Below, piece by piece: positions 1,255 through 21,049 of a stretch of DNA of 64,000 nucleotides. The position numbers were made by a program, and so were the translations under genes. Position 1 is the stretch's first letter. Each line of letters begins with the position of its first letter. The DNA lies in assembly GCA_013239625.1 (NCBI GenBank), contig MU056898.1, positions 2,137,717 to 2,201,716 of the forward strand, read 5' to 3'. The DNA comes from Lama guanicoe (lineage: Eukaryota). Below the pieces are notes generated by a model. It saw only the letters and a list, made by a program, of their open reading frames with translations, had not been told where the DNA came from and searched no databases.

Positions 1255-4200
1255 AGCTGCTGCCCTCCTGGGCGGGAGGCTCAGGGCCGGGGAACAGCTG
1301 TGCAGGGTAACGTTACTGGTCCCCATTTTCCAGATAAGAGAACAGACTCGGAGCAGTCTAGGGACAAACCACCCCACAAGGCCAAGGTCAAGGGCAGAGG
1401 GCAGCCAGGGCACCTCAGGCTGGGGGGTCAGGTGGGCGTGGGCTCTGGTCCAGTGCCTTACTGCCAGGGCTCCTTCATCCCTGTCCAAGACCTTCAGGAT
1501 AAAGGAGCCTGTGTGGCCGCTCTGGGGACTGATGCGCTCACACAGGGGAGCCGGTGGCAGCCGACTGCCTGGGGCTGCACTCTGGGGCTGCGGGCAGGTG
1601 CCTGGCATTCTGGTCTCTGTAAAATGGGACGTGGGACAGCTCTCTACTCCTAGGGGTCACTCAGGGCTGGAGGTGCCCAGTGCATGTGAGCCATGACTCT
1701 CCTGAAAAGATGACAGCAATAATGGAACATGGACCTGTGCAGGCCCTGGGCCTGCCCTGCAGACAGCAGACGGGATGGGGTGAGGTGGGCTTTGGGGCAA
1801 AAGGCTGGCTGCACACAAGAGCTGGGCTAGGGGACAGGTCCTTAATCAAAGCTCCCTACCCCACCCCAGCCCTCCACCTTGCTCTGAGGAGCGGCCAAGG
1901 TCTTTCAGGAGCTCCTCCCTGGATGGGTGGGTGGATGGGGGCGGCATGGGCGTTGCCAGAGGGAACCAGCGAGAGGCAGGCCCCCCGCCAGTCACCCCAG
2001 CTGCGTAGCGGCCCTTCTCCGCGCCTATTTGGAGCACCTGACTCACCTTAATTATGGGCCCTTAGGCACGTCGGGGCGTGCCGGGACGCCAGAGATAGCC
2101 CGGAAACACAGGCTCCGGGGGCGAGCGGACATCCCGGGCTGCCAGGTGCAGCTTCGCCTCCCACCAGCACCTCCCCACCCTGGAGGTCCCCGCAGCGCCC
2201 CCTTCTTCAGCCAGAGGCCCTCTGTCTGGCCTGTAAGCCCCGCAGCAGCCTCCCTGGCCTGAGGTGGGAATTGTCCGGGGGCGGCGGCGCGGGGCGGGGA
2301 GCCGGTCAGGGGTCCGCGACCTGCCTCCAGGCCTGGGCCGGGATGCCCCGCAGAATCTGGAACGCCGCGCCCACGCGCTAGGCAAGGCCGCCCACGCCTC
2401 CAACTCCAATGTATATTTAGCCTCTTTATCAAATGTTCGCCGTGAACCGTGTGAACCGCCTAATAGCGGCTGGAAGTGAAATCCGATTCCCGGGCAGAAA
2501 GAAGCATGTGACAAGGCCTGAGCGGCAAGGATCTCCGCGAGCGCGCTGGGCAGGTGCTGGGGCCCCGACGCGCCTGGCCTCGGTACTCACGGTCTCCTCT
2601 TCCTGCCTCCTCGCTCCCCCCACCCCAGCATCAGAAACCGCCTCCTCACTCAGCCCCTTCTCCAGAGAAGAGGACGCCTGGAGTCTGCAAGGGGGCGGGG
2701 TGTCGGGGAGAGGAGCCAGGGCCGGAGAGGGAGTCCTCGCGGGTGTGGGTTCCCATCCGAGTTGGTGACCTCTTAGTCACGTCAGTCCAAGGTCGTAGGA
2801 ACAGCTTCTAGGGATCTATTTCTGCCAGTTTCTTTCCAGGATGTGGAGAGGGTGGGGCGTGCTGGTTGGGGGTCCCTGTCCCACCGCAGGGCGGGCCTTG
2901 GTTCCGAAAGCACCTCTTGCCCCGAGTCTCCCCCAAAGGCGGTGTCGGGCGGCTGCACAAGTTTGTGCCACCCTCGCGCGGCCGCTGTTGTCGTGGTCGC
3001 TATGACGACGCCCCACGGTTTTATTTTTAATAGCGGCCAGCGATTAGAGGGATGCCTGCGCCCCCGCCCCCCGCAGATCCCCAGTCCCGGCTGGGGGTGC
3101 ACCCAGGCCTCCCCGCTCCTCGCCTCGCTCTGGCCTGAGACGCCCACAGAAGACGTCCCCTTCTGCACCCCCAGATCTCTTCCATCCGTCCCAGACTCCA
3201 ACTGGGAGCCCCTGAAGTGCCAAACCGGGAAGGGGCACAGAGGGGATCACTCATCGAGGTTTGCTCTGAGGTGACGGGACCCCCAGGAACCGGCTAGCCT
3301 TGTGCAGACGTTGGAGCAGGAGGGGCCCTTAACTGCAACCCCATACAAGGTGACCTTTCCCCCTTCATTCCCACATATACTATTAAACCGAGTCTTTAAA
3401 CCCCAAATAAGTGTCCTCGGGTCCCTCCACCTCTCCGCCCGAGAAGAATCCGAGGCTCAACCAGACGTGAAGCTGTCAGCTCCCGGGTCCAGTAGGCCAC
3501 GGAGGGCTCGGCAGTGCACTTTTGGCTGCCTGCCGGAAACCGTCCAGTGGTCTCCCTCCGCAAAGCAGTGGAAGGTTCCACCTGGTAGGACAAGGCTCTC
3601 AAGTGTTTTTAAACGTTCCCCAAATTTCCCTGGTTCTTTCTCATGCCTCCTTCATCCTGACCACCCGAGAGCCCGCTTGAAGACGGGTGGGTCGCTGGTG
3701 GGGCTACGGCGGGGAGGCAGGTGCCTTGAGGGGGCTGCCTGCAGGTATGTGGAGGCATGTGGAAGGGAGCTTGTAGCCCCGGCCGCTGAGAATCGCAGAG
3801 GGGCTCGCCCCTCCCCCCAGTTATTTGGGGGAAGGCAAGTGCCCCTGAAGCGCCCACTGGACTCAGCCTTTGAAATGCCAGCGTCGGCCAAGCCCAGGAT
3901 GAAAGACCGCCCGCGGGGTTGCGCCTTTACTGCCTTTGTCTGGCCGGAGTGCGGCCGCGGCGGGGGCAACGGATTATCCATAGGATGGGGACAAGCGGGT
4001 GGAGGGCTGGGTCGGGCGGAATTCTCTTTCCGCCGCCCACCCACCCACTCGGGCGCTTCCTAGCCTCCAAGGGCCTCGCTGTCTAGCTTTGGGGTCGCAC
4101 GGCCCGTCGCCCCTCTAGCACTGCTACCAGGATTCGTCGGCCCCCTCGAGGGACCTGCCGCTGGGGTCTGATCCCACCTAGTCTAGGCGAAAGGAACCTA

Positions 4201-4675
4201 ACCAGCCCGGCGCACCGCCATTTGGTGCCGGGGAAGCCGTCCAGACGCGCTCAGGCCTCAGCCTCCAGCGCGTCGCTCCCCCGCATCGCGCTCTGTGCCG
4301 CGCCGCGGCCGGAGGTGGCGCTCTGTGCGCCCAGCGGATCCGGCGCGGGAGGCTCAGACTCCCCGGTTCCTCACGAGCAGCTACTTTCCCTTTCTTCCCT
4401 TCCACCCCCTCGAGTTCCCAGCTCAGGTCGTGGCCCGGCCCTTCCACGAGGGAGTGGGGACTTGGAGGACTCGGGCTCCCAGGGCGGGGACGAGGCACGC
4501 TGCAGCCCCCCTCCTCCGACCTGGGCGCTCTCCCATCCCGGAATGTGGGTGGAGGTTCTTCATTCAGACGCCCCAGGCATTGGATTCTGGGCGGGGGCGC
4601 GTGGCAGCCGCCAGGTGAGTGCCCCAGACGCGCCCCTAAACCCGCCCAGCCTCTCACCAGAGACTCACTCCCCCT

Positions 4676-4685
4676 CCTTTTATGG
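4676..4685. promoter_or_regulatory. CArG box / serum response element CCTTTTATGG
   Basis: Exact CC(A/T)6GG about 0.5 kb upstream of the inferred TSS; an SRE is known at a similar position in the human PDGFA promoter. Confidence 0.8.
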
Positions 4686-5131
4686 AATGGGGGAGGCAGA
4701 GGCCCAGGATCCAAACCGTGGAAAGAGGCTGGAGCGCCTAGGCGAGGGGCGGGAGGCGGGGGCCGGCTTGCTTTTGCCCTTTTTGGCGTAGCAGCTCTGG
4801 GCGCTGCCCTCTGCTGCCGCTGGGGCCCGAGAGAGGCGAGCCGGCGACGGCGGCGCTTCTGCTGCGGCCTCCTCCCCTCCCCGTCCGGTGCTGCAGGATT
4901 GCAGCTGGCACTGGAGGGTGGGCAAGCTCGAGGGAGGGGCGCGCGGGGAGCCTCGGCGGGCGAGCGAAGCCCTGGTGGCTGTGCTCGGAGCCGGGCGCGG
5001 GGCCTTGATGGATTTTACTGCCTGCGTGAGCGCGTGTGTGTGCTCACTGCGGCGGCGGCGGCGGCGGCCGGGCCCTGCCCGGTCCGTGCAGCCCCCGCGC
5101 GCTCCCGGGGTCCGGGTCCCGGGCCCGGAAT

Positions 5132-5475
5132 NNNNNNNNNNNNNNNNNNNNNNNNNNNNNNNNNNNNNNNNNNNNNNNNNNNNNNNNNNNNNNNNNNNNN
5201 NNNNNNNNNNNNNNNNNNNNNNNNNNNNNNNNNNNNNNNNNNNNNNNNNNNNNNNNNNNNNNNNNNNNNNNNNNNNNNNNNNNNNNNNNNNNNNNNNNNN
5301 NNNNNNNNNNNNNNNNNNNNNNNNNNNNNNNNNNNNNNNNNNNNNNNNNNNNNNNNNNNNNNNNNNNNNNNNNNNNNNNNNNNNNNNNNNNNNNNNNNNN
5401 NNNNNNNNNNNNNNNNNNNNNNNNNNNNNNNNNNNNNNNNNNNNNNNNNNNNNNNNNNNNNNNNNNNNNNNNNNN
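5132..5475 (+). promoter_or_regulatory. PDGFA: Inferred PDGFA core promoter (G-rich Sp1/EGR1 element, TATA, TSS) hidden in an assembly gap
   Basis: The gap starts right after GGCCCGGAAT, which as I recall precedes the G-tract nuclease-hypersensitive element in human PDGFA; the sequence after the gap is 5'UTR-like. Content not visible. Confidence 0.55.
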
Positions 5476-6140
5476 GAGCCGAGGGCGCGCCGCGGAGGGG
5501 CGCACGCAGGCCGCCGGGCCGCGCCGTGCTGGGCCGCGCCGTGCCCTGTCGGGCGGCGGCGGCGGCAAAAGGAGGCCGGAGGCGAGCTCGGGGCCCGCGG
5601 TGGGCGCGCAGGGCCGCCCGCAGCCCGCAGGGAGAGCGCGAGCCCGTGCCGGGCCTGGCCGGGCGTCCAGACAGGTGATGGGGTGGTGCGGCGACAGCGT
5701 CTCAAGCCTCGCTCCGGGGTCCCTTTCGGGGCTGATGCCCGCAAATATGCAGAATTACCGGCCGGGTCGCTCCTANNNNNNNNNNNNNNNNNNNNNNNNN
5801 NNNNNNNNNNNNNNNNNNNNNNNNNNNNNNNNNNNNNNNNNNNNNNNNNNNNNNNNNNNNNNNNNNNNNNNNNNNNNNNNNNNNNNNNNNNNNNNNNNNN
5901 NNNNNNNGGCGCGGCGAGCGCGCACTCCCTGCTCCTCCTCCTCCTTGCTGGCGCTGCCTGCCTCTCCGCACTCGCTGCTCGCGCCGGGCGCGCTCCGTCG
6001 GCTCCCTGCTCTCCGCGCCACCCTTCTCCGGGNNNNNNNNNNNNNNNNNNNNNNNNNNNNNNNNNNNNNNNNNNNNNNNNNNNNNNNNNNNNNNNNNNNN
6101 NNNNNNNNNNNNNNNNNNNNNNNNNNNNNNNNNNNNNNNN
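5476..6140 (+). other. PDGFA: PDGFA exon 1 long GC-rich 5'UTR (partly gapped)
   Basis: Contains CCGCAAATATGCAGAATTACCGGCCGGGTCGCTCC and CTGGCGCTGCCTGCCTCTCCGCACTC, which match my recollection of the human PDGFA leader. Confidence 0.8.
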
Positions 6141-6203
6141 NNNNNNNNNNNNNNNNNNNNNNNNNNNNNNNNNNNNNNNNNNNNNNNNNNNNNNNNGGCC
6201 GAG
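6141..6203 (+). CDS. PDGFA: PDGFA exon 1 coding part (signal peptide); start codon inferred inside gap 6033-6196
   Basis: Visible G GCC GAG|gtgggt (6197-6203, ...AE, phase-0 donor) joins exon 2 in frame; start 6141 assumes the conserved 21-codon exon 1. Confidence 0.7.
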
Positions 6204-7104
6204 GTGGGTGCCACCCCCGCACCCGGTCCCCTCTCCAGCTCCCCCGGCGCACGCCCCCTGCAGCCGCCCACCGGCCGAGGCGCCCTGGGCTCCGGGGGTC
6301 TGCAGAGCGCATTTTGATTTCTGCTAAGGTGGTCGATTTTTAATTTTCCCAACTGGGTTCTATTTTCTGCCATGTCTAAGTGTGGCTGGTGAGTTTCCAG
6401 CGTGTTGCGTCGCTCTGCCGTGGAAGGACAGAGTGGCGGCGGGGTCGACGAGTGGGGAGAAACTTCGGGGGGCGCGAGCTCCTCTCGGAGGAGGGAAACC
6501 CCGGGCTTGGCGGACAATGCAGCATTGGGGTGCAGGGAGCGCGGAAGGGGGTGTGTATGTGAGAGCCGGCGGCTCCGGAGAAGGGAGAAGAGCCGCCGAC
6601 AAGCAGGTAGGGGTGGCTGCTGCAGGAGTCCCGGCAGGCTGGGTGGGCAGCATGGAGCCGCAGCTCCAGGTTTTCCATCCCCACGCCCGGCGGGACGGCT
6701 AGCCCGGTGCAGTCCCACCCGACCGGGGCCTGCTTACAGGTGGCTGAGCGAGGCGAGCCGGGGCCGGGCCAGGCGCCCGCGCCCTCCCACCGCCTGCGTC
6801 CCCACCCCCCCAACCTCGAATTCTGAATCCCTGGGAGCTCTGTGATGAATGACTTTCTACAGCCCCCTTCGTGGGAACTTAGTGCTTGAGACCCCCCCAG
6901 CGACCCCCGACTCCCTTTAAAAATCTGGAAGGAGTAGGGGGATACCGAGTGGTGGGGGTGGTCTGGGCAGGGACCATGAGCTGCGAGAGGCAGATATTTA
7001 TTTAACTCTCACGTTCCCTGGCAGCCCCTCCCAGCCGCGGCTGCGTTCGGGGAGTCTTAGTCGGCGCTAGGGCCGCGGCTGGGCTGGAGTCCGGGGTGGG
7101 GCGG

Positions 7105-7106
<2 letters not shown>

Positions 7107-7145
<39 letters not shown>

Positions 7146-7146
7146 C
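7107..7146. repeat. (GT)15 microsatellite followed by GC alternation, intron 1
   Basis: Read directly. Confidence 0.95.
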
Positions 7147-7556
7147 CGCGCACACCCGCGTGTTTGCAGGAGGAGAGACCCTCTCCCCCGCAGGTTCGGC
7201 CTGGGATTCCGGGTGTGAAATTTAAGCCTCAGGCTAGATTAAAGTGTTAGGGCTGCCGTGACTTTCGTCGCCGATCCGTGACGCATTTCAACTTGATCTT
7301 TCTAGATGTCGATTTCACTACTAGATCAGAAAACTCCCCGGGCCCCTTGCAGCCCCTAGACCTCCTGTAACTGACACCGGGGCGGGGGCGGAGGGGCCGG
7401 AGTGGGGGGCTTCTTTGGAAATTTAAGGGTGGGGAGGGCCTTCTTTTTGCAAAGGGCAGACACGGATAGGGACGGAGAATTTGGGGGTCTCACCCAGCCC
7501 CACCCCAGCCTCAGGCGCCAGGGCCGGGGCTGGGGGTCGGGCGGCCTTCATGCTAA

Positions 7557-7919
<363 letters not shown>

Positions 7920-9151: not shown

Positions 9152-12100
9152 TGCCACTCCCTGATGGGTCTGGGAAAGTGGGGAGACTGGCTCCCAGAGA
9201 GGTTCCAGGGCTCAGGCTCTTTTTTCAGCTGGCAGGAGTAAGGCCTGGAAAAGGCTGGGCCCCCTGGCAGGACGGGCTTTCGGCTGCCCCCGGGAAATGG
9301 GCCATTTACTTTCTGCCCCGACCATTCTTATTCTGGTCTCTGCAGCCCCGCCCCCCACCCCCTCCATTAATGCTTTTAGCATTGCAGCTCTGGGATCACG
9401 CTGATAGCATTCCTGACCTGGGGGCTCTGGGTCCAGGGCCTCCTTGGGAGGGTCCAAACAGAAGCCCAAGTGCACTAGCTGGTTCTCTGGCTGGTTTCAA
9501 ATTGCCCCCTTATAAAGAGCCCCCGGGAGCTGTCTCCCTCCTGCCCCAGGGAGTGGACAGAGTCGATTGCCGGCCCTCCCCCCACACCTGTCAGATGTTT
9601 CGGAGTCTGAGGGTGGGACTCCTAGTGCCTGGAAACCTTTGGGGTGAGAGCGTCGCAGGGACCCCAGGATCTCCCTGGCTCACTAGACTTGGCCCTGGGG
9701 GACCCTGAAGTGGGTCTCCTGCATCTCGGTCAGCTCTCCTCTCACAGGCGTGGATGCTGAGAACAGGGCTCCGCCGTCTCTGGTCTGAGCTGGTTGCTTC
9801 TATGGCTTGTTTTGGGGGGGTCTTTCCCCTAACTTCGGCTTCTGCCCAGAGTGAAGAGCTGAAACAGGTCTGGCTGCTCAGAGAGGTTGTGAACAGCCGT
9901 GGGGTCGTTCCTTGGAGGATGAACTGCCCTCTGTGCCTTGAATGCCCCACTAGACCAGTCAGAGGCCAGTCTGGGATCAGTGAGGAAGGGGCCGGTGCGG
10001 AGAGACCCCCCAGGCCTGGATGTCCTCACCCCTCAATGCTGTGTGCCCAGGAGGCAGGAGAGGGGCTCCTTTAGCAGACTGGCTCCTCCCTCGAGTGGGC
10101 GGGGCATGTGGTTGGCAGGTGGGGTTCCGGACTCCTCCCAGTGGAAAGGCCTTGTTCCCATTTTACAGGTGAGGAGCGGAGCCTGGAACTCCCGCCCCGA
10201 GGCTGGCGGCCCTGAGGCGGTGGATTCCTGAGCCAGTGTCTGTGGGCTCCAATCGTGTGCCAGGATGGGCCGTGGGTTTTTCACATGTGGCTTTGGGTGG
10301 GGAGACCAGCAGTATGTGGAGCTGGGGGCCTGTTGGTCAGGTGTGCCGAGAGTCAGCCGTTCAGCAGAGCGGCGGTGGGAGCTGAGGAGGTCTGTTCTCG
10401 GAGTGGCCTGGACAGGCGCCTGTGGTCACTGAATAACCAGAACATAAATATCCCTAACCCGGCCACTGACGGCGCCTCTAGGACCGATGGCTAGAGGAGG
10501 GCTCCCCATCTTTCTGTGCCTGAAAGACAAAAGGGAAACCAGTCAATTAACTGTCCTGAGAGCAGTTTGGGGGCCTGGTCCTTGTGGGGCCTTCTCTTGG
10601 AAGTCCCCACTGCTGGCTTCTCCACCTGTGGATCAGATGGCTGCCTCCCTGTCCGCCGGGTCTGCGCTGAGTTTCCTGACCACCTGTCTCCACTGGGCAG
10701 TGGATGAGCCTGTCTGAGCTGCTTCTACTCTGTCTCTCACTGACAGCGAGTCCTGGTTCAGATTTCAGGACAGGTGATGAACTGGGAGGCTGTGTCTTCT
10801 CTGCTTTCCCGGGCCTCGTCCCTGGGCAGGAGGGCGGTCTGGTTCTGGACACAGCCCCCCGGGGTCCTTCCGCCGGTCTTGCTGGTCTTTCCACGTCTCG
10901 GGCCTCTGTTTCTTCCAGATGAAGAGGCAGTGCCGACTGCGTGCACATCGTGATGAGGTCCTGGGGGAGAGCGGCTGCCGCCTGGCTGGAGGGAGGCATG
11001 GGGTTGTCGTCCGTGATGCTGCAGTTCCGTTTTCCTGTAGACACTGAGGATGGACCAGCTCCTCCTGGGTTTGGCGGTGGCAAGATGGCCACCACTAGGA
11101 CGTGACTCATTATGTCACTTTTTCGTGAAAACGTGCTTCTTGTAACAGTTGGTTGATGGGAAATTCTTATTGCATGAGTAGTTCTGTTCTGATCTTATTT
11201 TGGGTCTCAAAAAAAATTGGTGGTAGTGGAACACTGAGTCATTTTAAGGGAAGAGCTGGGCCCCCCTGGACCTCAGCATCCAGAAGGGCCATCCCCTTCA
11301 TCCCCACTGCCTTTGCAGTGTTGAGGTTTCGTGTGCAATGAGTGCAGTTCCCAGACCTGCGGATGTGGACAGTCACCAAGGCCTTGGTGGGCTGGGCACA
11401 GAGGAGGGGGCCTCAGTCTGAGCTGGTGGCTGGGACACCACTGGAGTTTCTTGGGGAGGGAGGTGGCAAGACAAGGGATCTTTGTGCAGCTGCTGAAGCT
11501 CCTGGCTGTTGGGGCACCTTCTCGGGCCCACTGCCCCTAGTTGCCTACTGGGGAGATAGCGATGGAGGGGAGAAGTGGGAAGAGACCCCCCCCAGCTGGG
11601 GGCCAGGGTGGGGAGGCCAGGCCAGTTAGTCCAGCTGTAGGCACTGTCATGAGCTGGGTCAGGCCAGATGGCAGGTGGCAGGACTGTGTGTCCCTTCCAG
11701 CCCTTCTGGGGGGCCCTGGGGGCAGAGGGAGTGGGGATGTGTGTGTGAGGGGCTGGAGCCAGTCTGCCCGGTTCTGCGGCCCTCTGATATTTGGGTGGCA
11801 AAGCTCTTCCCCTCCTGAAGCTGCCTCCTGCACCAGGCACCAGGACTCCCGTCTCATGCTTCACGCTACACAGGAGGCTTCTCTTCTGCTCTCGGTCCTC
11901 GAAGCCTCTCCCTCGCAGGGGGCGGGGTTCAGGGACAAACGGGGCCAGGATGCTCGGGCCCGGGCCAGGGTTGGTGCAGTGAGGGAGGGCGGGGGAGGGA
12001 GACCCTGCACTGGCAGTCACAGCAGCAGGCCTTGCTGGTCCTTGGTCCAGCCTGCTGTCCTCGGGGCCCCGTTCAGCTGGGAGCCGCAGGCCCGCTGGCC

Positions 12101-12464
12101 CTGGTCTCGCGGATGGGGACGGCTGGCCTCAAGTGCTTCCTGATGTGGTCCAGGCCTCACCTGGGCTTCCCTGAGGAGGAGCCTCGGGGGAGAGTGGCTG
12201 CAGCCTTCCCCAGGGGTCAGGGGCTCCGCAGCCAGGGCTCCATGTCTGGACCTCGTGTAGGCTTCGCAGGGGCAGGTGGACGTTTTTGGCAGTTGGGCGT
12301 CTTTCATCCTTTGCACGTCTGGAACCCCCCCTTACCAGAGTGGAGGGACCCCATCTGTACTGGGGAGGGAGAGCAGGCTGGCCTGTGGGAGGTGCTGCTG
12401 TACGGGCCCCGGGGCTGTCGCAAGGTGTGGGCGGCTGGTCACCACCCCCTCTTCCCATCTGTAG

Positions 12465-12569
12465 GGGCTGAGGATCCCCTGGAGACCAGCCTGAGAGCCC
12501 ACGGGGGCCGTGGCGCCAAGCATGCACCGGAGAAGCGGCCTGTGCCCATTCGGAGGAAAAGGAGCATCG
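12465..12569 (+). CDS. PDGFA: PDGFA exon 3 ([35 protein letters not shown]; furin site RRKR)
   Basis: ctgtag|GG...ATCG|gtgagc, 105 nt, phase-compatible with exons 2 and 4. Confidence 0.98.
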
Positions 12570-13926
12570 GTGAGCCTGGTGCTGTGGGCGGGGTGGCGGG
12601 AGGGGCTGGGGGGACCCGCCCCTCTCCTCCAACCGTGGCCTCAGGGTAGCAGGCCCTTCTCTCCTCCCGAAAACAAAGGCAGAGCCTGCTGGGGGGCCCC
12701 CCGCCTCCCGCTCTCCCTGCCCTAGCTGCTCCTTGCTGCAGGCCTGGCCTGGGCCTTGAGTTTCCAGGAGAGGAGAACCATCATAAATTCCTTCAGTGCC
12801 CAGTCTTGTTGGGGCCTGCTCTGGAGGCAGCTTCCCTGGAAGACGGGTGGTGTTTAATTTCCAGTTTGAAACGTGGAGCACGATGTGTTCCTGGCCACGC
12901 TACAGAGCAGTGGGTGCAGCCGTGGGGTGCCTCGTGGGCCCTCCCCGGGGCCCCCACTCCACTCGGGCCAGGCCCACGGGGCCGCCGGCTCAGGTCTGGA
13001 GGACATTTTGGCTCTTGTCCCCTCCTGCAGAGCGTCCCCGGGTCTGCCTGGCTCCTTCAGGAGCCATAGGCTGGTGGGGTCTCCTGGGGCCTCAGGCTCA
13101 GCTCTGAGGGGAGATCTTGGCCCAGGGATGCAGTTAGGGGGTGTGACCCCCCCAGTCCCATGCCACCTGGGGGTCCCCCTGCTGATTCCCCAGGTGACCT
13201 CGGGTAAGTGACTCCCTCCGCATGAGCTTTATTCCTCTAAGAAGACGGTGTTTGTAGCCTCTACTTTTGGGCATGCGCGCGCGCGCTCGCGCGTGTGTGT
13301 AAACGATCCTTGTTAAGGCCCACAGGCCTCCCCAGGTGACGTTTTTCATGAACCTCTATTTTGCATCTCAAAGACCGGGCACTCCAGCAAGGCTTCAGGA
13401 CCCTCTACTGAGGCTCATCCTGCTCCAGACAAGGGTCCTGCTCCAGACGGGCAGTTGGGGGGGGGGCGGGGAGGTGGCCAATGTCCACGAGTAAACAAGG
13501 GCTGGACCAGAAGCCTCTTTCCCTGTCTCCACCCTCGGCCCCACCTGGCCGGGCACCCTGGGTCCTTCCTGCCTGCTGGATGCTGGGCTGGGCCCTGGGA
13601 GTGGCACCCCTTCTCCCACTGGGGCGGCCAGACCCCAAAGGGGTGGTCTTGATCTGCTGGCTCGTCCCTGGAGATCGTCCAGGCTGCGCCTACCCACCGA
13701 GTCTCCCGGCAGGAGGGAGCCCTCAGAAAGCAGGGACGGCTGAGAGGCTGATGCTCCGCCACCCCATGATCCCCCCAAACCCCAGGCACCCGGGCAAAGG
13801 CCAATGGGGGAGGCTGCAGGGCTTGTGTGAGCCCCCGGTGTGTGGGTGGCTTTCCAGCCCTCTGCGCCCACCCTTCCCTGGGGTGTCCCCTCCGGGCCCT
13901 CAAGCCCCTGCTCGTCTTTGGGCTAG

Positions 13927-14532
<606 letters not shown>

Positions 14533-20021: not shown

Positions 20022-20148
20022 GTGGCCAAGGTGGAATACGTCAGGAAAAAGCCAAAGTTAAAAGAGGTCCAGGTGCGGCTGGAGGAGCACTTGGAGTGCA
20101 CGTGCACGACCGCCAGCCCGACCCCGGGCCACCGAGAAGAGGAGGCAG
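20022..20148 (+). CDS. PDGFA: PDGFA exon 5 (VAKVEYVRKKPKLKEVQVRLEEHLECTCTTASPTPGHREEEA)
   Basis: gggcag|GTG...GCAG|gtacgc, 127 nt; terminal CxC of the cystine knot. Confidence 0.98.
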
Positions 20149-20679: not shown

Positions 20680-20735
20680 GAAGGCGTAGGGAGTCAGGTA
20701 AAAAACGGAAAAGAAAAAGGTTAAAACCCACCTAA
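20680..20735 (+). CDS. PDGFA: PDGFA alternative exon 6 coding part (basic retention motif GRRRESGKKRKRKRLKPT*); exon extends to 20748
   Basis: caacag|GA...TAA(20733-20735)...CCAG|gtagga, 69-nt exon; long 211-aa isoform. Confidence 0.97.
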
Positions 20736-21049
20736 TGCGGCCAACCAGGTAGGAGCCGTCCACGGATGTGCCGCAGTCCCGGGTGGGGGCGTGATGACTG
20801 ATCACTCGGTGAATCACCCTGGAGGCGAGGATGCGCCCTGATTGGCCCTGATCGACTGCGAGCTTCCGGTGTCTAGCTGGGCTGTGGGTCTCCGCGCTCC
20901 CATCCCCGGTTCCCCCACCCGCTGCGCAGGACGCCTGACTCACGGCTCCTCCCCCTCTGGGGCCCCTGCTCTGGCTTTGGTCCTTGTTGATTGGGGAGTC
21001 AAAGGCATCACGTGAGTGGAGTGATTTGGGTTCCCTGAGCAGCAGTGGG

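What the first reader, a model, noticed from the sequence alone, without database searches (positions are those of the whole stretch)
4543..4620. Candidate upstream alternative first exon giving a signal-peptide-less, potentially nuclear PDGF-A
Seen: an ATG at 4543 (G at -3) opens 24 stop-free codons, MWVEVLHSDAPGIGFWAGARGSRQ, ending exactly at a perfect donor CAG|GTGAGT (4614/4615) in phase 0. That is the phase of exon 2 (7677), so splicing gives ...[12 protein letters not shown]... in frame (199 aa short, 214 aa long). The peptide has no long hydrophobic core. The site lies ~0.6 kb upstream of the canonical promoter and would bypass the uORF-laden leader. Established: the exon-6 basic tail can act as a nuclear-targeting signal when PDGF-A is not secreted. 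Inference: promoter choice combined with exon-6 choice could switch PDGF-A between secreted, matrix-bound, cytosolic and nuclear (intracrine) forms. Human annotation may already include an upstream-exon transcript; I cannot confirm this.
Basis: partly seen in the sequence, partly recalled or inferred. Interest (0 to 1): 0.75.

Follow-up and report, generated by a model that had tools for sequence, protein, structure and literature searches.

The report
Upstream alternative first exon of PDGFA
A short exon upstream of the growth-factor gene PDGFA, which would replace its secretion signal, is really in the sequence and is already modelled in monkeys and apes, but nothing shows that it makes a working protein.

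Summary
An ATG at 4543 opens 24 stop-free codons that end at 4614 on a full-consensus donor, in phase 0 like PDGFA exon 2 at 7677.

It is not new. A public predicted protein, PDGFA isoform X7 of Macaca fascicularis (P0003), starts with the orthologous 24 residues and runs straight into exon 2. Chimpanzee X5 uses the same leader with another acceptor. A marmoset model reads the same exon in another frame. A squirrel model contains the ATG inside a longer upstream frame.

The exon and donor are therefore conserved from a camelid-like genome to primates. The open frame itself is weak evidence: 25% of positions in this GC-rich stretch give such a frame. A second reading frame is about equally conserved. 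Also, 19 of 83 stored PDGFA clusters carry unrelated non-signal leaders before exon 2.

I found no paper on a signal-less PDGF-A.

Verdict: a real, already-annotated minor first exon. A functional nuclear PDGF-A remains speculation.

The parts
4309..4542 (+). Likely 5' untranslated part of the upstream exon. The start is not defined. The stretch is ATG-free and lies in a CpG-rich region.
   Evidence: Local tblastn: the vole model P0108 covers 4309-4497 (47% over 64 aa, E 2e-7) and the marmoset model P0112 covers 4509-4574 (77% over 22 aa, E 8e-7). No ATG between 3985 and 4543. GC is 0.70.
4543..4614 (+). 24-codon open frame of the candidate upstream first exon. ATG at 4543-4545 with G at -3.
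   Evidence: I count 20 of 24 identical by eye.
4615..4620 (+). 5' splice site (donor) with a full consensus match. It is the only such 9-mer on the + strand of the window.
   Evidence: Expected 0.26 per strand per window.
5008..5103 (+). Upstream ATG and open frame (MDFTACVS...) in or just before the long leader of exon 1. It starts other predicted signal-less isoforms in pangolin, bats, sheep and gelada.
   Evidence: P0107 residues 1-28 align to 5008-5103 at 69%, E 2e-8. P0114, P0109 and P0071 are shown.
6197..6203 (+). Last seven bases of canonical exon 1 that are not masked, followed by the donor gtgggt. The signal-peptide coding part lies inside the N run 6033-6196 and was not read.
7677..7773 (+). 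PDGFA exon 2 (97 bases), entered in phase 0 after the acceptor ...ctctgcttgcag.
   Evidence: Pfam PF04692 PDGF_N at 1.3e-16. tblastn.
12465..12569 (+). PDGFA exon 3.
14099..14289 (+). PDGFA exon 4, the core of the PDGF/VEGF domain.
   Evidence: Pfam PF00341 at 1.2e-15. 511 PDGFA hits.
20022..20148 (+). PDGFA exon 5.
20680..20748 (+). PDGFA exon 6 (69 bases), encoding the basic tail (...KKRKRKRLKPT) and a stop.
   Evidence: The 69-bp length agrees with the abstract of PMC2289277.

Best explanation
The stretch is the orthologue of a minor upstream first exon of PDGFA. It is transcribed from dispersed start sites in the CpG island several hundred bases 5' of the main promoter.

Its very strong donor at 4614/4615 can be joined to exon 2, which skips exon 1 together with the long leader and the signal peptide. 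In other transcripts it is joined to an acceptor inside exon 1.

Exon 2 is entered in phase 0 and the GC-rich upstream DNA has few stops. The first AUG therefore happens to open a frame into PDGF-A, and annotation pipelines report it as a signal-less isoform.

What is shown: the sequence features, and the existence of the same exon and the same junction in primate gene models.

What is inferred: that the junction is used in this genome; that it is a low-level by-product or a regulatory non-secreted transcript; and that any product would stay in the cytosol as unprocessed pro-PDGF-A. Such a product would lack the ER-dependent disulfide knot, dimerisation and furin cleavage, so it would not be a receptor ligand.
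For: The sequence features are.

The donor is rarer than chance. Expected 0.006 per 2 kb of local composition, observed at this spot.

Orthologous models among 147 stored PDGFA proteins from named public sources:
- P0003 (macaque X7, 4 members): the same 24-residue leader joined to exon 2.
- P0111 (chimpanzee X5, 3 members): the same leader joined inside exon 1.
- P0095 (ground squirrel X1, 16 members): the same ATG and first residues inside a longer upstream frame.
- P0112 (marmoset X6): the same exon joined to exon 2 but read in another frame.

The window is camelid-like: 152 of 154 residues are identical to alpaca isoform X2 over 12113-12574. Donor, ATG and frame length are therefore kept across two mammalian superorders.

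4543 is the first ATG for any start site within 3988-4543.

Five rows on record as RNA, from 3 studies, hold 0.35-0.65 of the sampled words of 4300-5131.

Signs that it is incidental rather than a selected protein:
- 24.6% of neighbouring positions give such a frame.
- The marmoset model in another frame is about as similar to the window (77% over 22 aa) as the macaque leader is in the finding's frame (83% over 12 aa), and the similarity continues upstream of the ATG.
- 19 of the 83 stored proteins with enough sequence before a recognisable exon 2 carry a non-canonical leader. These leaders are mutually unrelated, and only 1 of the 19 is this one.
- The macaque model ends in a non-canonical tail.
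Against: The contigs could come from the long leader of exon 1, from the opposite strand or from DNA.

Gene models labelled X are predictions, and I could not see what reads support them.

No camelid model with this leader was among the 147 proteins I could see. However, one search listed only 120 of its 511 hits, and admits only proteins up to about 211 aa.

Keeping an ATG, a 24-codon length and a phase-0 donor between camelid and catarrhine primates is more than neutral DNA would usually do. Selection on the reading frame is therefore not excluded.
Confidence: 0.6

Rival explanations
1. Chance. The ATG, the open frame and the donor are ordinary features of conserved CpG-island promoter DNA and are never spliced in this species. 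The primate models would rest on rare or aberrant transcripts.
For: The open frame is expected at a quarter of positions. One full-consensus 9-mer per 64 kb strand is not unusual (expected 0.26). The macaque model has an odd C-terminus and the marmoset model needs a frame change inside exon 2. There are no reads for this genome.
Against: The donor sits within about 1.6 kb of the exon 1 donor on the sense strand (expected 0.006 per 2 kb). The same exon end is used in three primate models. RNA-labelled runs hold part of 4300-5131.
Confidence: 0.2
2. The exon is mainly a non-coding alternative leader. Its donor is mostly joined to an acceptor inside exon 1, so the canonical AUG and signal peptide are kept and only the 5' UTR changes, shortening the uORF-rich leader. 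The exon 2 junction is a rare side product. This rival overlaps with the best explanation.
For: P0111 (chimpanzee) joins the same leader inside exon 1. P0095 (squirrel, 16 members), P0091 (gibbon X4, 20 members), P0106 and P0108 join upstream exons to the leader in frame with the canonical MRTWAC... start.
Against: In P0111 the frame through exon 1 is not the canonical one and exon 2 is skipped. The acceptor region in this window is masked (N runs 5132-5475, 5776-5907 and 6033-6196) and could not be examined. P0003 and P0112 do join exon 2.
Confidence: 0.3
3. Promoter choice yields a translated, signal-less PDGF-A that acts inside the cell, and with exon 6 it is carried to the nucleus.
For: 4543 is the first AUG, with G at -3. 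The frame into exon 2 is intact, and its length and most residues are kept in macaque and chimpanzee. The exon 6 basic tail is present. The title of Maher et al. 1989, seen in a reference list, says that exon 6 encodes a nuclear targeting signal.
Against: No protein, ribosome or localisation data exist. No paper turned up in five searches. Conservation is not frame-specific. The leaders of signal-less models differ between lineages. By general knowledge of the family, a cystine-knot protein made in the cytosol cannot form its disulfides or its dimer. The only model with this exact junction has a non-canonical C-terminus without the exon 6 tail.
Confidence: 0.06

Closest known systems
Predicted PDGFA isoform X7 of Macaca fascicularis (stored as P0003; nr)
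   Same: It starts with a 24-residue leader, 20 of 24 identical to the window's by eye. The leader is joined directly to exon 2 with no signal peptide.
   Different: It is a prediction in another order of mammals. It is 242 aa and ends in a tail that is neither the exon 6 nor the exon 7 ending. I could not see what supports it.
Predicted PDGFA isoform X5 of Pan troglodytes (P0111) and X6 of Callithrix jacchus (P0112)
   Same: They use the same upstream exon. P0111 has the same 24 residues. P0112 covers 4509-4574 and joins exon 2.
   Different: P0111 joins an acceptor inside exon 1 in a shifted frame and skips exon 2. P0112 starts at an ATG further upstream, reads the exon in another frame and changes frame inside exon 2.
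Other predicted signal-less PDGFA isoforms (for example cat X2 P0131, donkey X4 P0143, sheep P0114, rat P0004)
   Same: An alternative first exon or a read-through is joined in phase 0 to exon 2 and replaces the signal peptide. This applies to 19 of 83 stored proteins.
   Different: Their leaders are unrelated to this one and to each other. They come from the exon 1 leader or from intron 1.
Secreted factors with an intracellular isoform made from an alternative first exon: intracellular IL-1 receptor antagonist, and the PDGF-B transcript from an intron 1 promoter (both recalled; Dirks et al. 1995 is not held)
   Same: Promoter or first-exon choice removes the signal peptide while keeping the rest of the frame.
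   Different: As I recall, expression of those transcripts was shown experimentally. Here nothing beyond gene models is available. Both names come from memory and from no call.
Nuclear targeting of non-secreted v-sis/PDGF constructs (Lee et al. 1987; Maher et al. 1989; titles seen in the reference list of PMC2289277)
   Same: The basic exon 6 sequence that those titles call a nuclear targeting signal is present in this gene at 20680-20748.
   Different: As I recall, those were engineered proteins and not a natural isoform. Neither paper is held, so I saw only the titles.

Membership tests
PDGFA gene locus | Exons encode the PDGF N-terminal region and the PDGF/VEGF cystine-knot domain. | tested here: met
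   Pfam PF04692 at 1.3e-16 for 7677-7772 and PF00341 at 1.2e-15 for 14101-14292.
PDGFA gene locus | Orthology to PDGF subunit A proteins, including the alternative 69-base exon 6 with its basic tail. | tested here: met
   511 hits named PDGF subunit A, at 95-100% identity over exon 4. Exons 2-6 were mapped.
Alternative first exon of a spliced gene | A consensus 5' splice site at the exon end, on the sense strand, upstream of a shared acceptor. | tested here: met
   It is the only full-consensus 9-mer on the + strand.
Alternative first exon of a spliced gene | The same exon and junction are present in gene models of other species. | tested here: met
   P0003, P0111, P0112 and partly P0095. This leader occurs in 3 of 147 stored proteins, plus 1 that reads the exon in another frame.
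Alternative first exon of a spliced gene | Junction-spanning reads in this species. | not testable with these tools
The run search had already been used.
Alternative first exon of a spliced gene | A transcription start site upstream of the exon (cap-selected reads). | not testable with these tools
   No such data were on hand. The only indirect signs are models that cover 4309-4497 and RNA-labelled contigs that hold part of 4300-5131.
Natural intracellular (intracrine) isoform of a secreted growth factor | The N-terminus has no signal peptide. | tested here: inconclusive
   By eye only: acidic residues near the start and no Leu/Val-rich core. No signal-peptide predictor was available, and the joined protein was not built.
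Natural intracellular (intracrine) isoform of a secreted growth factor | The new coding leader is under selection as protein. | tested here: inconclusive
   Another frame (marmoset model, 77% over 22 aa) is as similar as the finding's frame (83% over 12 aa), and the similarity runs on upstream of the ATG. No DNA from other mammals was available for a codon test.
Natural intracellular (intracrine) isoform of a secreted growth factor | The protein is detected and localised inside cells. | not tested
   This needs experiments. No paper was found.

The most novel reading that the evidence does not exclude
The 24-codon leader is a selected coding exon kept from camelids to apes. An upstream promoter makes a non-secreted pro-PDGF-A, and with exon 6 this product enters the nucleus and acts without a receptor. 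PDGFA would then have a fourth, intracrine output, set by promoter choice combined with exon 6 choice.
Probability: 0.06. Interest if true: 0.7.

Novelty: already known. Interest (0 to 1): 0.3.

Why it matters
PDGF-A is a major mitogen in development, fibrosis and glioma, and the field treats it as a purely secreted ligand with two tails. A natural isoform that never enters the secretory pathway would add a new mode of action, and the constructs and antibodies to test it are easy to make.

As things stand, the value of this check is more modest. The exon is real and conserved, and it is already present in public primate gene models. PDGFA annotation across vertebrates is full of unrelated signal-less first-exon models (19 of 83 here). 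That is a warning against reading function into any one of them without protein data.

Tried and rejected
Junction reads. I asked read laying for 2500-5131 with runs X1, X6, X10 and X22.

Earlier notes of the scan. By place I got one unrelated note; by the word PDGF I got nothing.

Papers.
- Searches for a PDGFA alternative promoter or first exon, nuclear targeting and exon 6, intracrine PDGF-A and signal-less or upstream-exon PDGFA found no report of this isoform.
- The search on four Ensembl transcript ids that I recalled matched none of them. Three papers only name PDGFA-DT, seen as a listing.
- The searches for named analogues found nothing usable, and the passages I read in PMC8733307 do not describe the intracellular IL-1Ra form.
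- Maher 1989, Lee 1987, Kaetzel 1994 and Dirks 1995 are not held.
- Of PMC2190695 I read passages. They place the human promoter elements at -120 to -33, -1418 to -1338 and +1605 to +1630.
- Of PMC2289277 only the abstract and the reference list are held.
- I did not consult supplementary files. Isoform tables there could name this transcript.

Camelid model. A second protein search centred on exon 2 (47 proteins, 27 of them new) gave no camelid model and no further protein with this leader.

Canonical start site. I considered placing it in the window, but it probably lies in the N run 5132-5475. This rests on a recalled leader length of about 0.85 kb, so the distance of roughly 0.7 kb is an estimate only.

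Joined model. The model was handled exon by exon.

Full report
WHAT IS IN THE SEQUENCE

The window carries PDGFA on the + strand.
- Exon 2 is 7677-7773. It follows the acceptor ...cttgcag, reads EAEIPREV..., and matches Pfam PDGF_N at 1.3e-16.
- Exon 3 is 12465-12569 and exon 4 is 14099-14289 (PDGF/VEGF domain, 1.2e-15).
- Exon 5 is 20022-20148. The 69-base exon 6, with the basic tail and a stop, is 20680-20748.
- Canonical exon 1 ends at 6203 with GAG|gtgggt. Its coding part and much of its long leader lie in the N runs 5132-5475, 5776-5907 and 6033-6196, which I left alone.

The finding's features are exact.
- The ATG is at 4543, with G at -3 and T at +4.
- It opens 24 stop-free codons that end at 4614.
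- A donor matching the whole 9-base consensus follows, in phase 0, which is the phase of exon 2.

IS IT MORE THAN CHANCE?

The donor is. The full-consensus 9-mer occurs once on the + strand of the 64 kb and not at all on the - strand. From base composition I expect 0.26 per strand per window, but only 0.006 in 2 kb of the local composition. This is a post hoc test.

The open frame is not. The frame stays open for 152 codons upstream of the ATG. When I take each of 4014 neighbouring positions as a last exon base, 987 (24.6%) close an ATG-opened phase-0 frame, and 810 of those frames have ten codons or more.

One point does favour translation. No other ATG lies on the + strand between 3985 and 4543, so 4543 would be the first AUG of any transcript that starts in that half kilobase.

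READS

The run search on 4300-5131 listed 24 rows, of which 18 hold part of the stretch. Five of those are on record as RNA, from 3 studies, with 0.35-0.65 of the sampled words. All of these are contigs. They could come from the upstream exon, from the leader of exon 1, from the other strand or from DNA.

I then asked read laying for 2500-5131, a stretch without N runs. The test named in the finding, junction reads from 4614 to 7677, could therefore not be made. From then on I worked beside those places.

GENE MODELS IN OTHER MAMMALS

I searched public named proteins with the natural open frame that holds exon 4, scoring only the exon. This gave 511 PDGFA hits, of which 120 were listed. A second search centred on exon 2 added 27 proteins.

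Four of the 147 stored proteins touch the candidate exon.
- P0003, PDGFA isoform X7 of Macaca fascicularis (242 aa, 4 members), begins with a 24-residue leader and continues directly with exon 2. By eye, 20 of its 24 leader residues equal the window's. The masked local tblastn gives 10 of 12 over 4543-4578.
- P0111, isoform X5 of Pan troglodytes (225 aa), has the same leader. It is then joined inside exon 1 in a non-canonical frame and skips exon 2, which restores the frame at exon 3.
- P0112, isoform X6 of Callithrix jacchus, covers 4509-4574 in another frame (77% over 22 aa, E 8e-7), starts at an ATG further upstream, and joins exon 2 with a frame change.
- P0095, isoform X1 of Ictidomys tridecemlineatus (16 members), holds the same ATG and first residues at position 18 of a longer upstream frame. 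It uses another donor and keeps the canonical start codon downstream.

A vole model (P0108) covers 4309-4497 (E 2e-7), so the exon probably extends well upstream of the ATG.

The window itself is camelid-like: 152 of 154 residues over 12113-12574 equal the N-terminus of alpaca isoform X2 (P0072). The ATG, the 24-codon length and the donor are therefore shared between a camelid-like genome and catarrhine primates.

WHY I DO NOT READ THIS AS A PROTEIN ISOFORM WITH A FUNCTION

First, the conservation is not specific to the finding's frame. The marmoset model in another frame is about as similar to the window, and the similarity continues upstream of the ATG. Conserved promoter or exon DNA would look like this.

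Second, signal-less leaders in front of exon 2 are common and unrelated to each other. Of 147 stored proteins, 86 show a recognisable start of exon 2, and 3 of those are cut off there. Of the remaining 83, 64 have a canonical-like signal peptide and 19 have some other leader. Only one of the 19 is this leader. The others map to the exon 1 leader or to intron 1. This suggests that exon 2's acceptor captures many stray first exons, and that pipelines then report whatever frame happens to be open.

Third, the macaque model ends in a tail that matches neither canonical ending.

Fourth, from general knowledge of the family, PDGF-A needs the ER for its disulfide knot, its dimer and its furin cleavage.

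Fifth, five paper searches found no report of a signal-less or intracrine PDGF-A. The claim that exon 6 can act as a nuclear targeting signal I could confirm only as the title of Maher et al. 1989 in a reference list, because that paper is not held.

PLACE RELATIVE TO THE PROMOTER

Passages of PMC2190695 put the human GC-rich core element at -120 to -33, an upstream S1-sensitive silencer at -1418 to -1338 and an intronic one at +1605 to +1630. The canonical start site in this window is probably inside the N run 5132-5475. That inference rests on a recalled leader length of about 0.85 kb. The candidate exon would then sit roughly 0.7 kb upstream, between the silencer and the core promoter. I could not test this.

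VERDICT

- I put about 0.6 on the reading that it is a real but minor first exon whose open frame is incidental.
- I put about 0.2 on the reading that it is not used at all in this species.
- I put about 0.06 on a functional intracrine or nuclear PDGF-A.

The joined protein was never built or searched, and every step was done exon by exon. What would settle the question is junction and cap-selected reads from camelid tissues, a codon-aware alignment score, and ribosome or peptide evidence.

Noticed in passing
window 12113-12574: An ATG-opened frame in intron 2 runs into exon 3. It is 152 of 154 residues identical to the N-terminus of predicted alpaca PDGFA isoform X2 (P0072). This is another signal-less first-exon model, and it shows that the window is from a camelid or a very close relative.
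   Followed up: partly
window 5008-5103: An upstream ATG (MDFTACVS...) lies in or before the exon 1 leader. It is the start of predicted isoforms in pangolin, bats, gelada and sheep. These either read exon 1 in a shifted frame and skip exon 2, or (in sheep) splice to exon 2.
   Followed up: partly
window 11156-11278: This stretch of intron 2 matches the first 41 residues of whale PDGFA isoforms P0079 and P0084 at 88%. It is yet another alternative first exon, conserved between whales and this genome.
   Followed up: no
stored proteins P0001-P0147: 19 of the 83 PDGFA protein clusters with enough sequence before exon 2 have a non-canonical, mutually unrelated leader. Several others (gibbon, squirrel, vole, bats) extend the frame upstream of the canonical start, which would bury the signal peptide.
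   Followed up: partly
window 7110-7140: A (GT)n microsatellite in intron 1.
   Followed up: no
window 6393-6529: A weak match (48-53% over about 30 aa) to the intron 1-derived leader of a rat PDGFA model, P0004.
   Followed up: no
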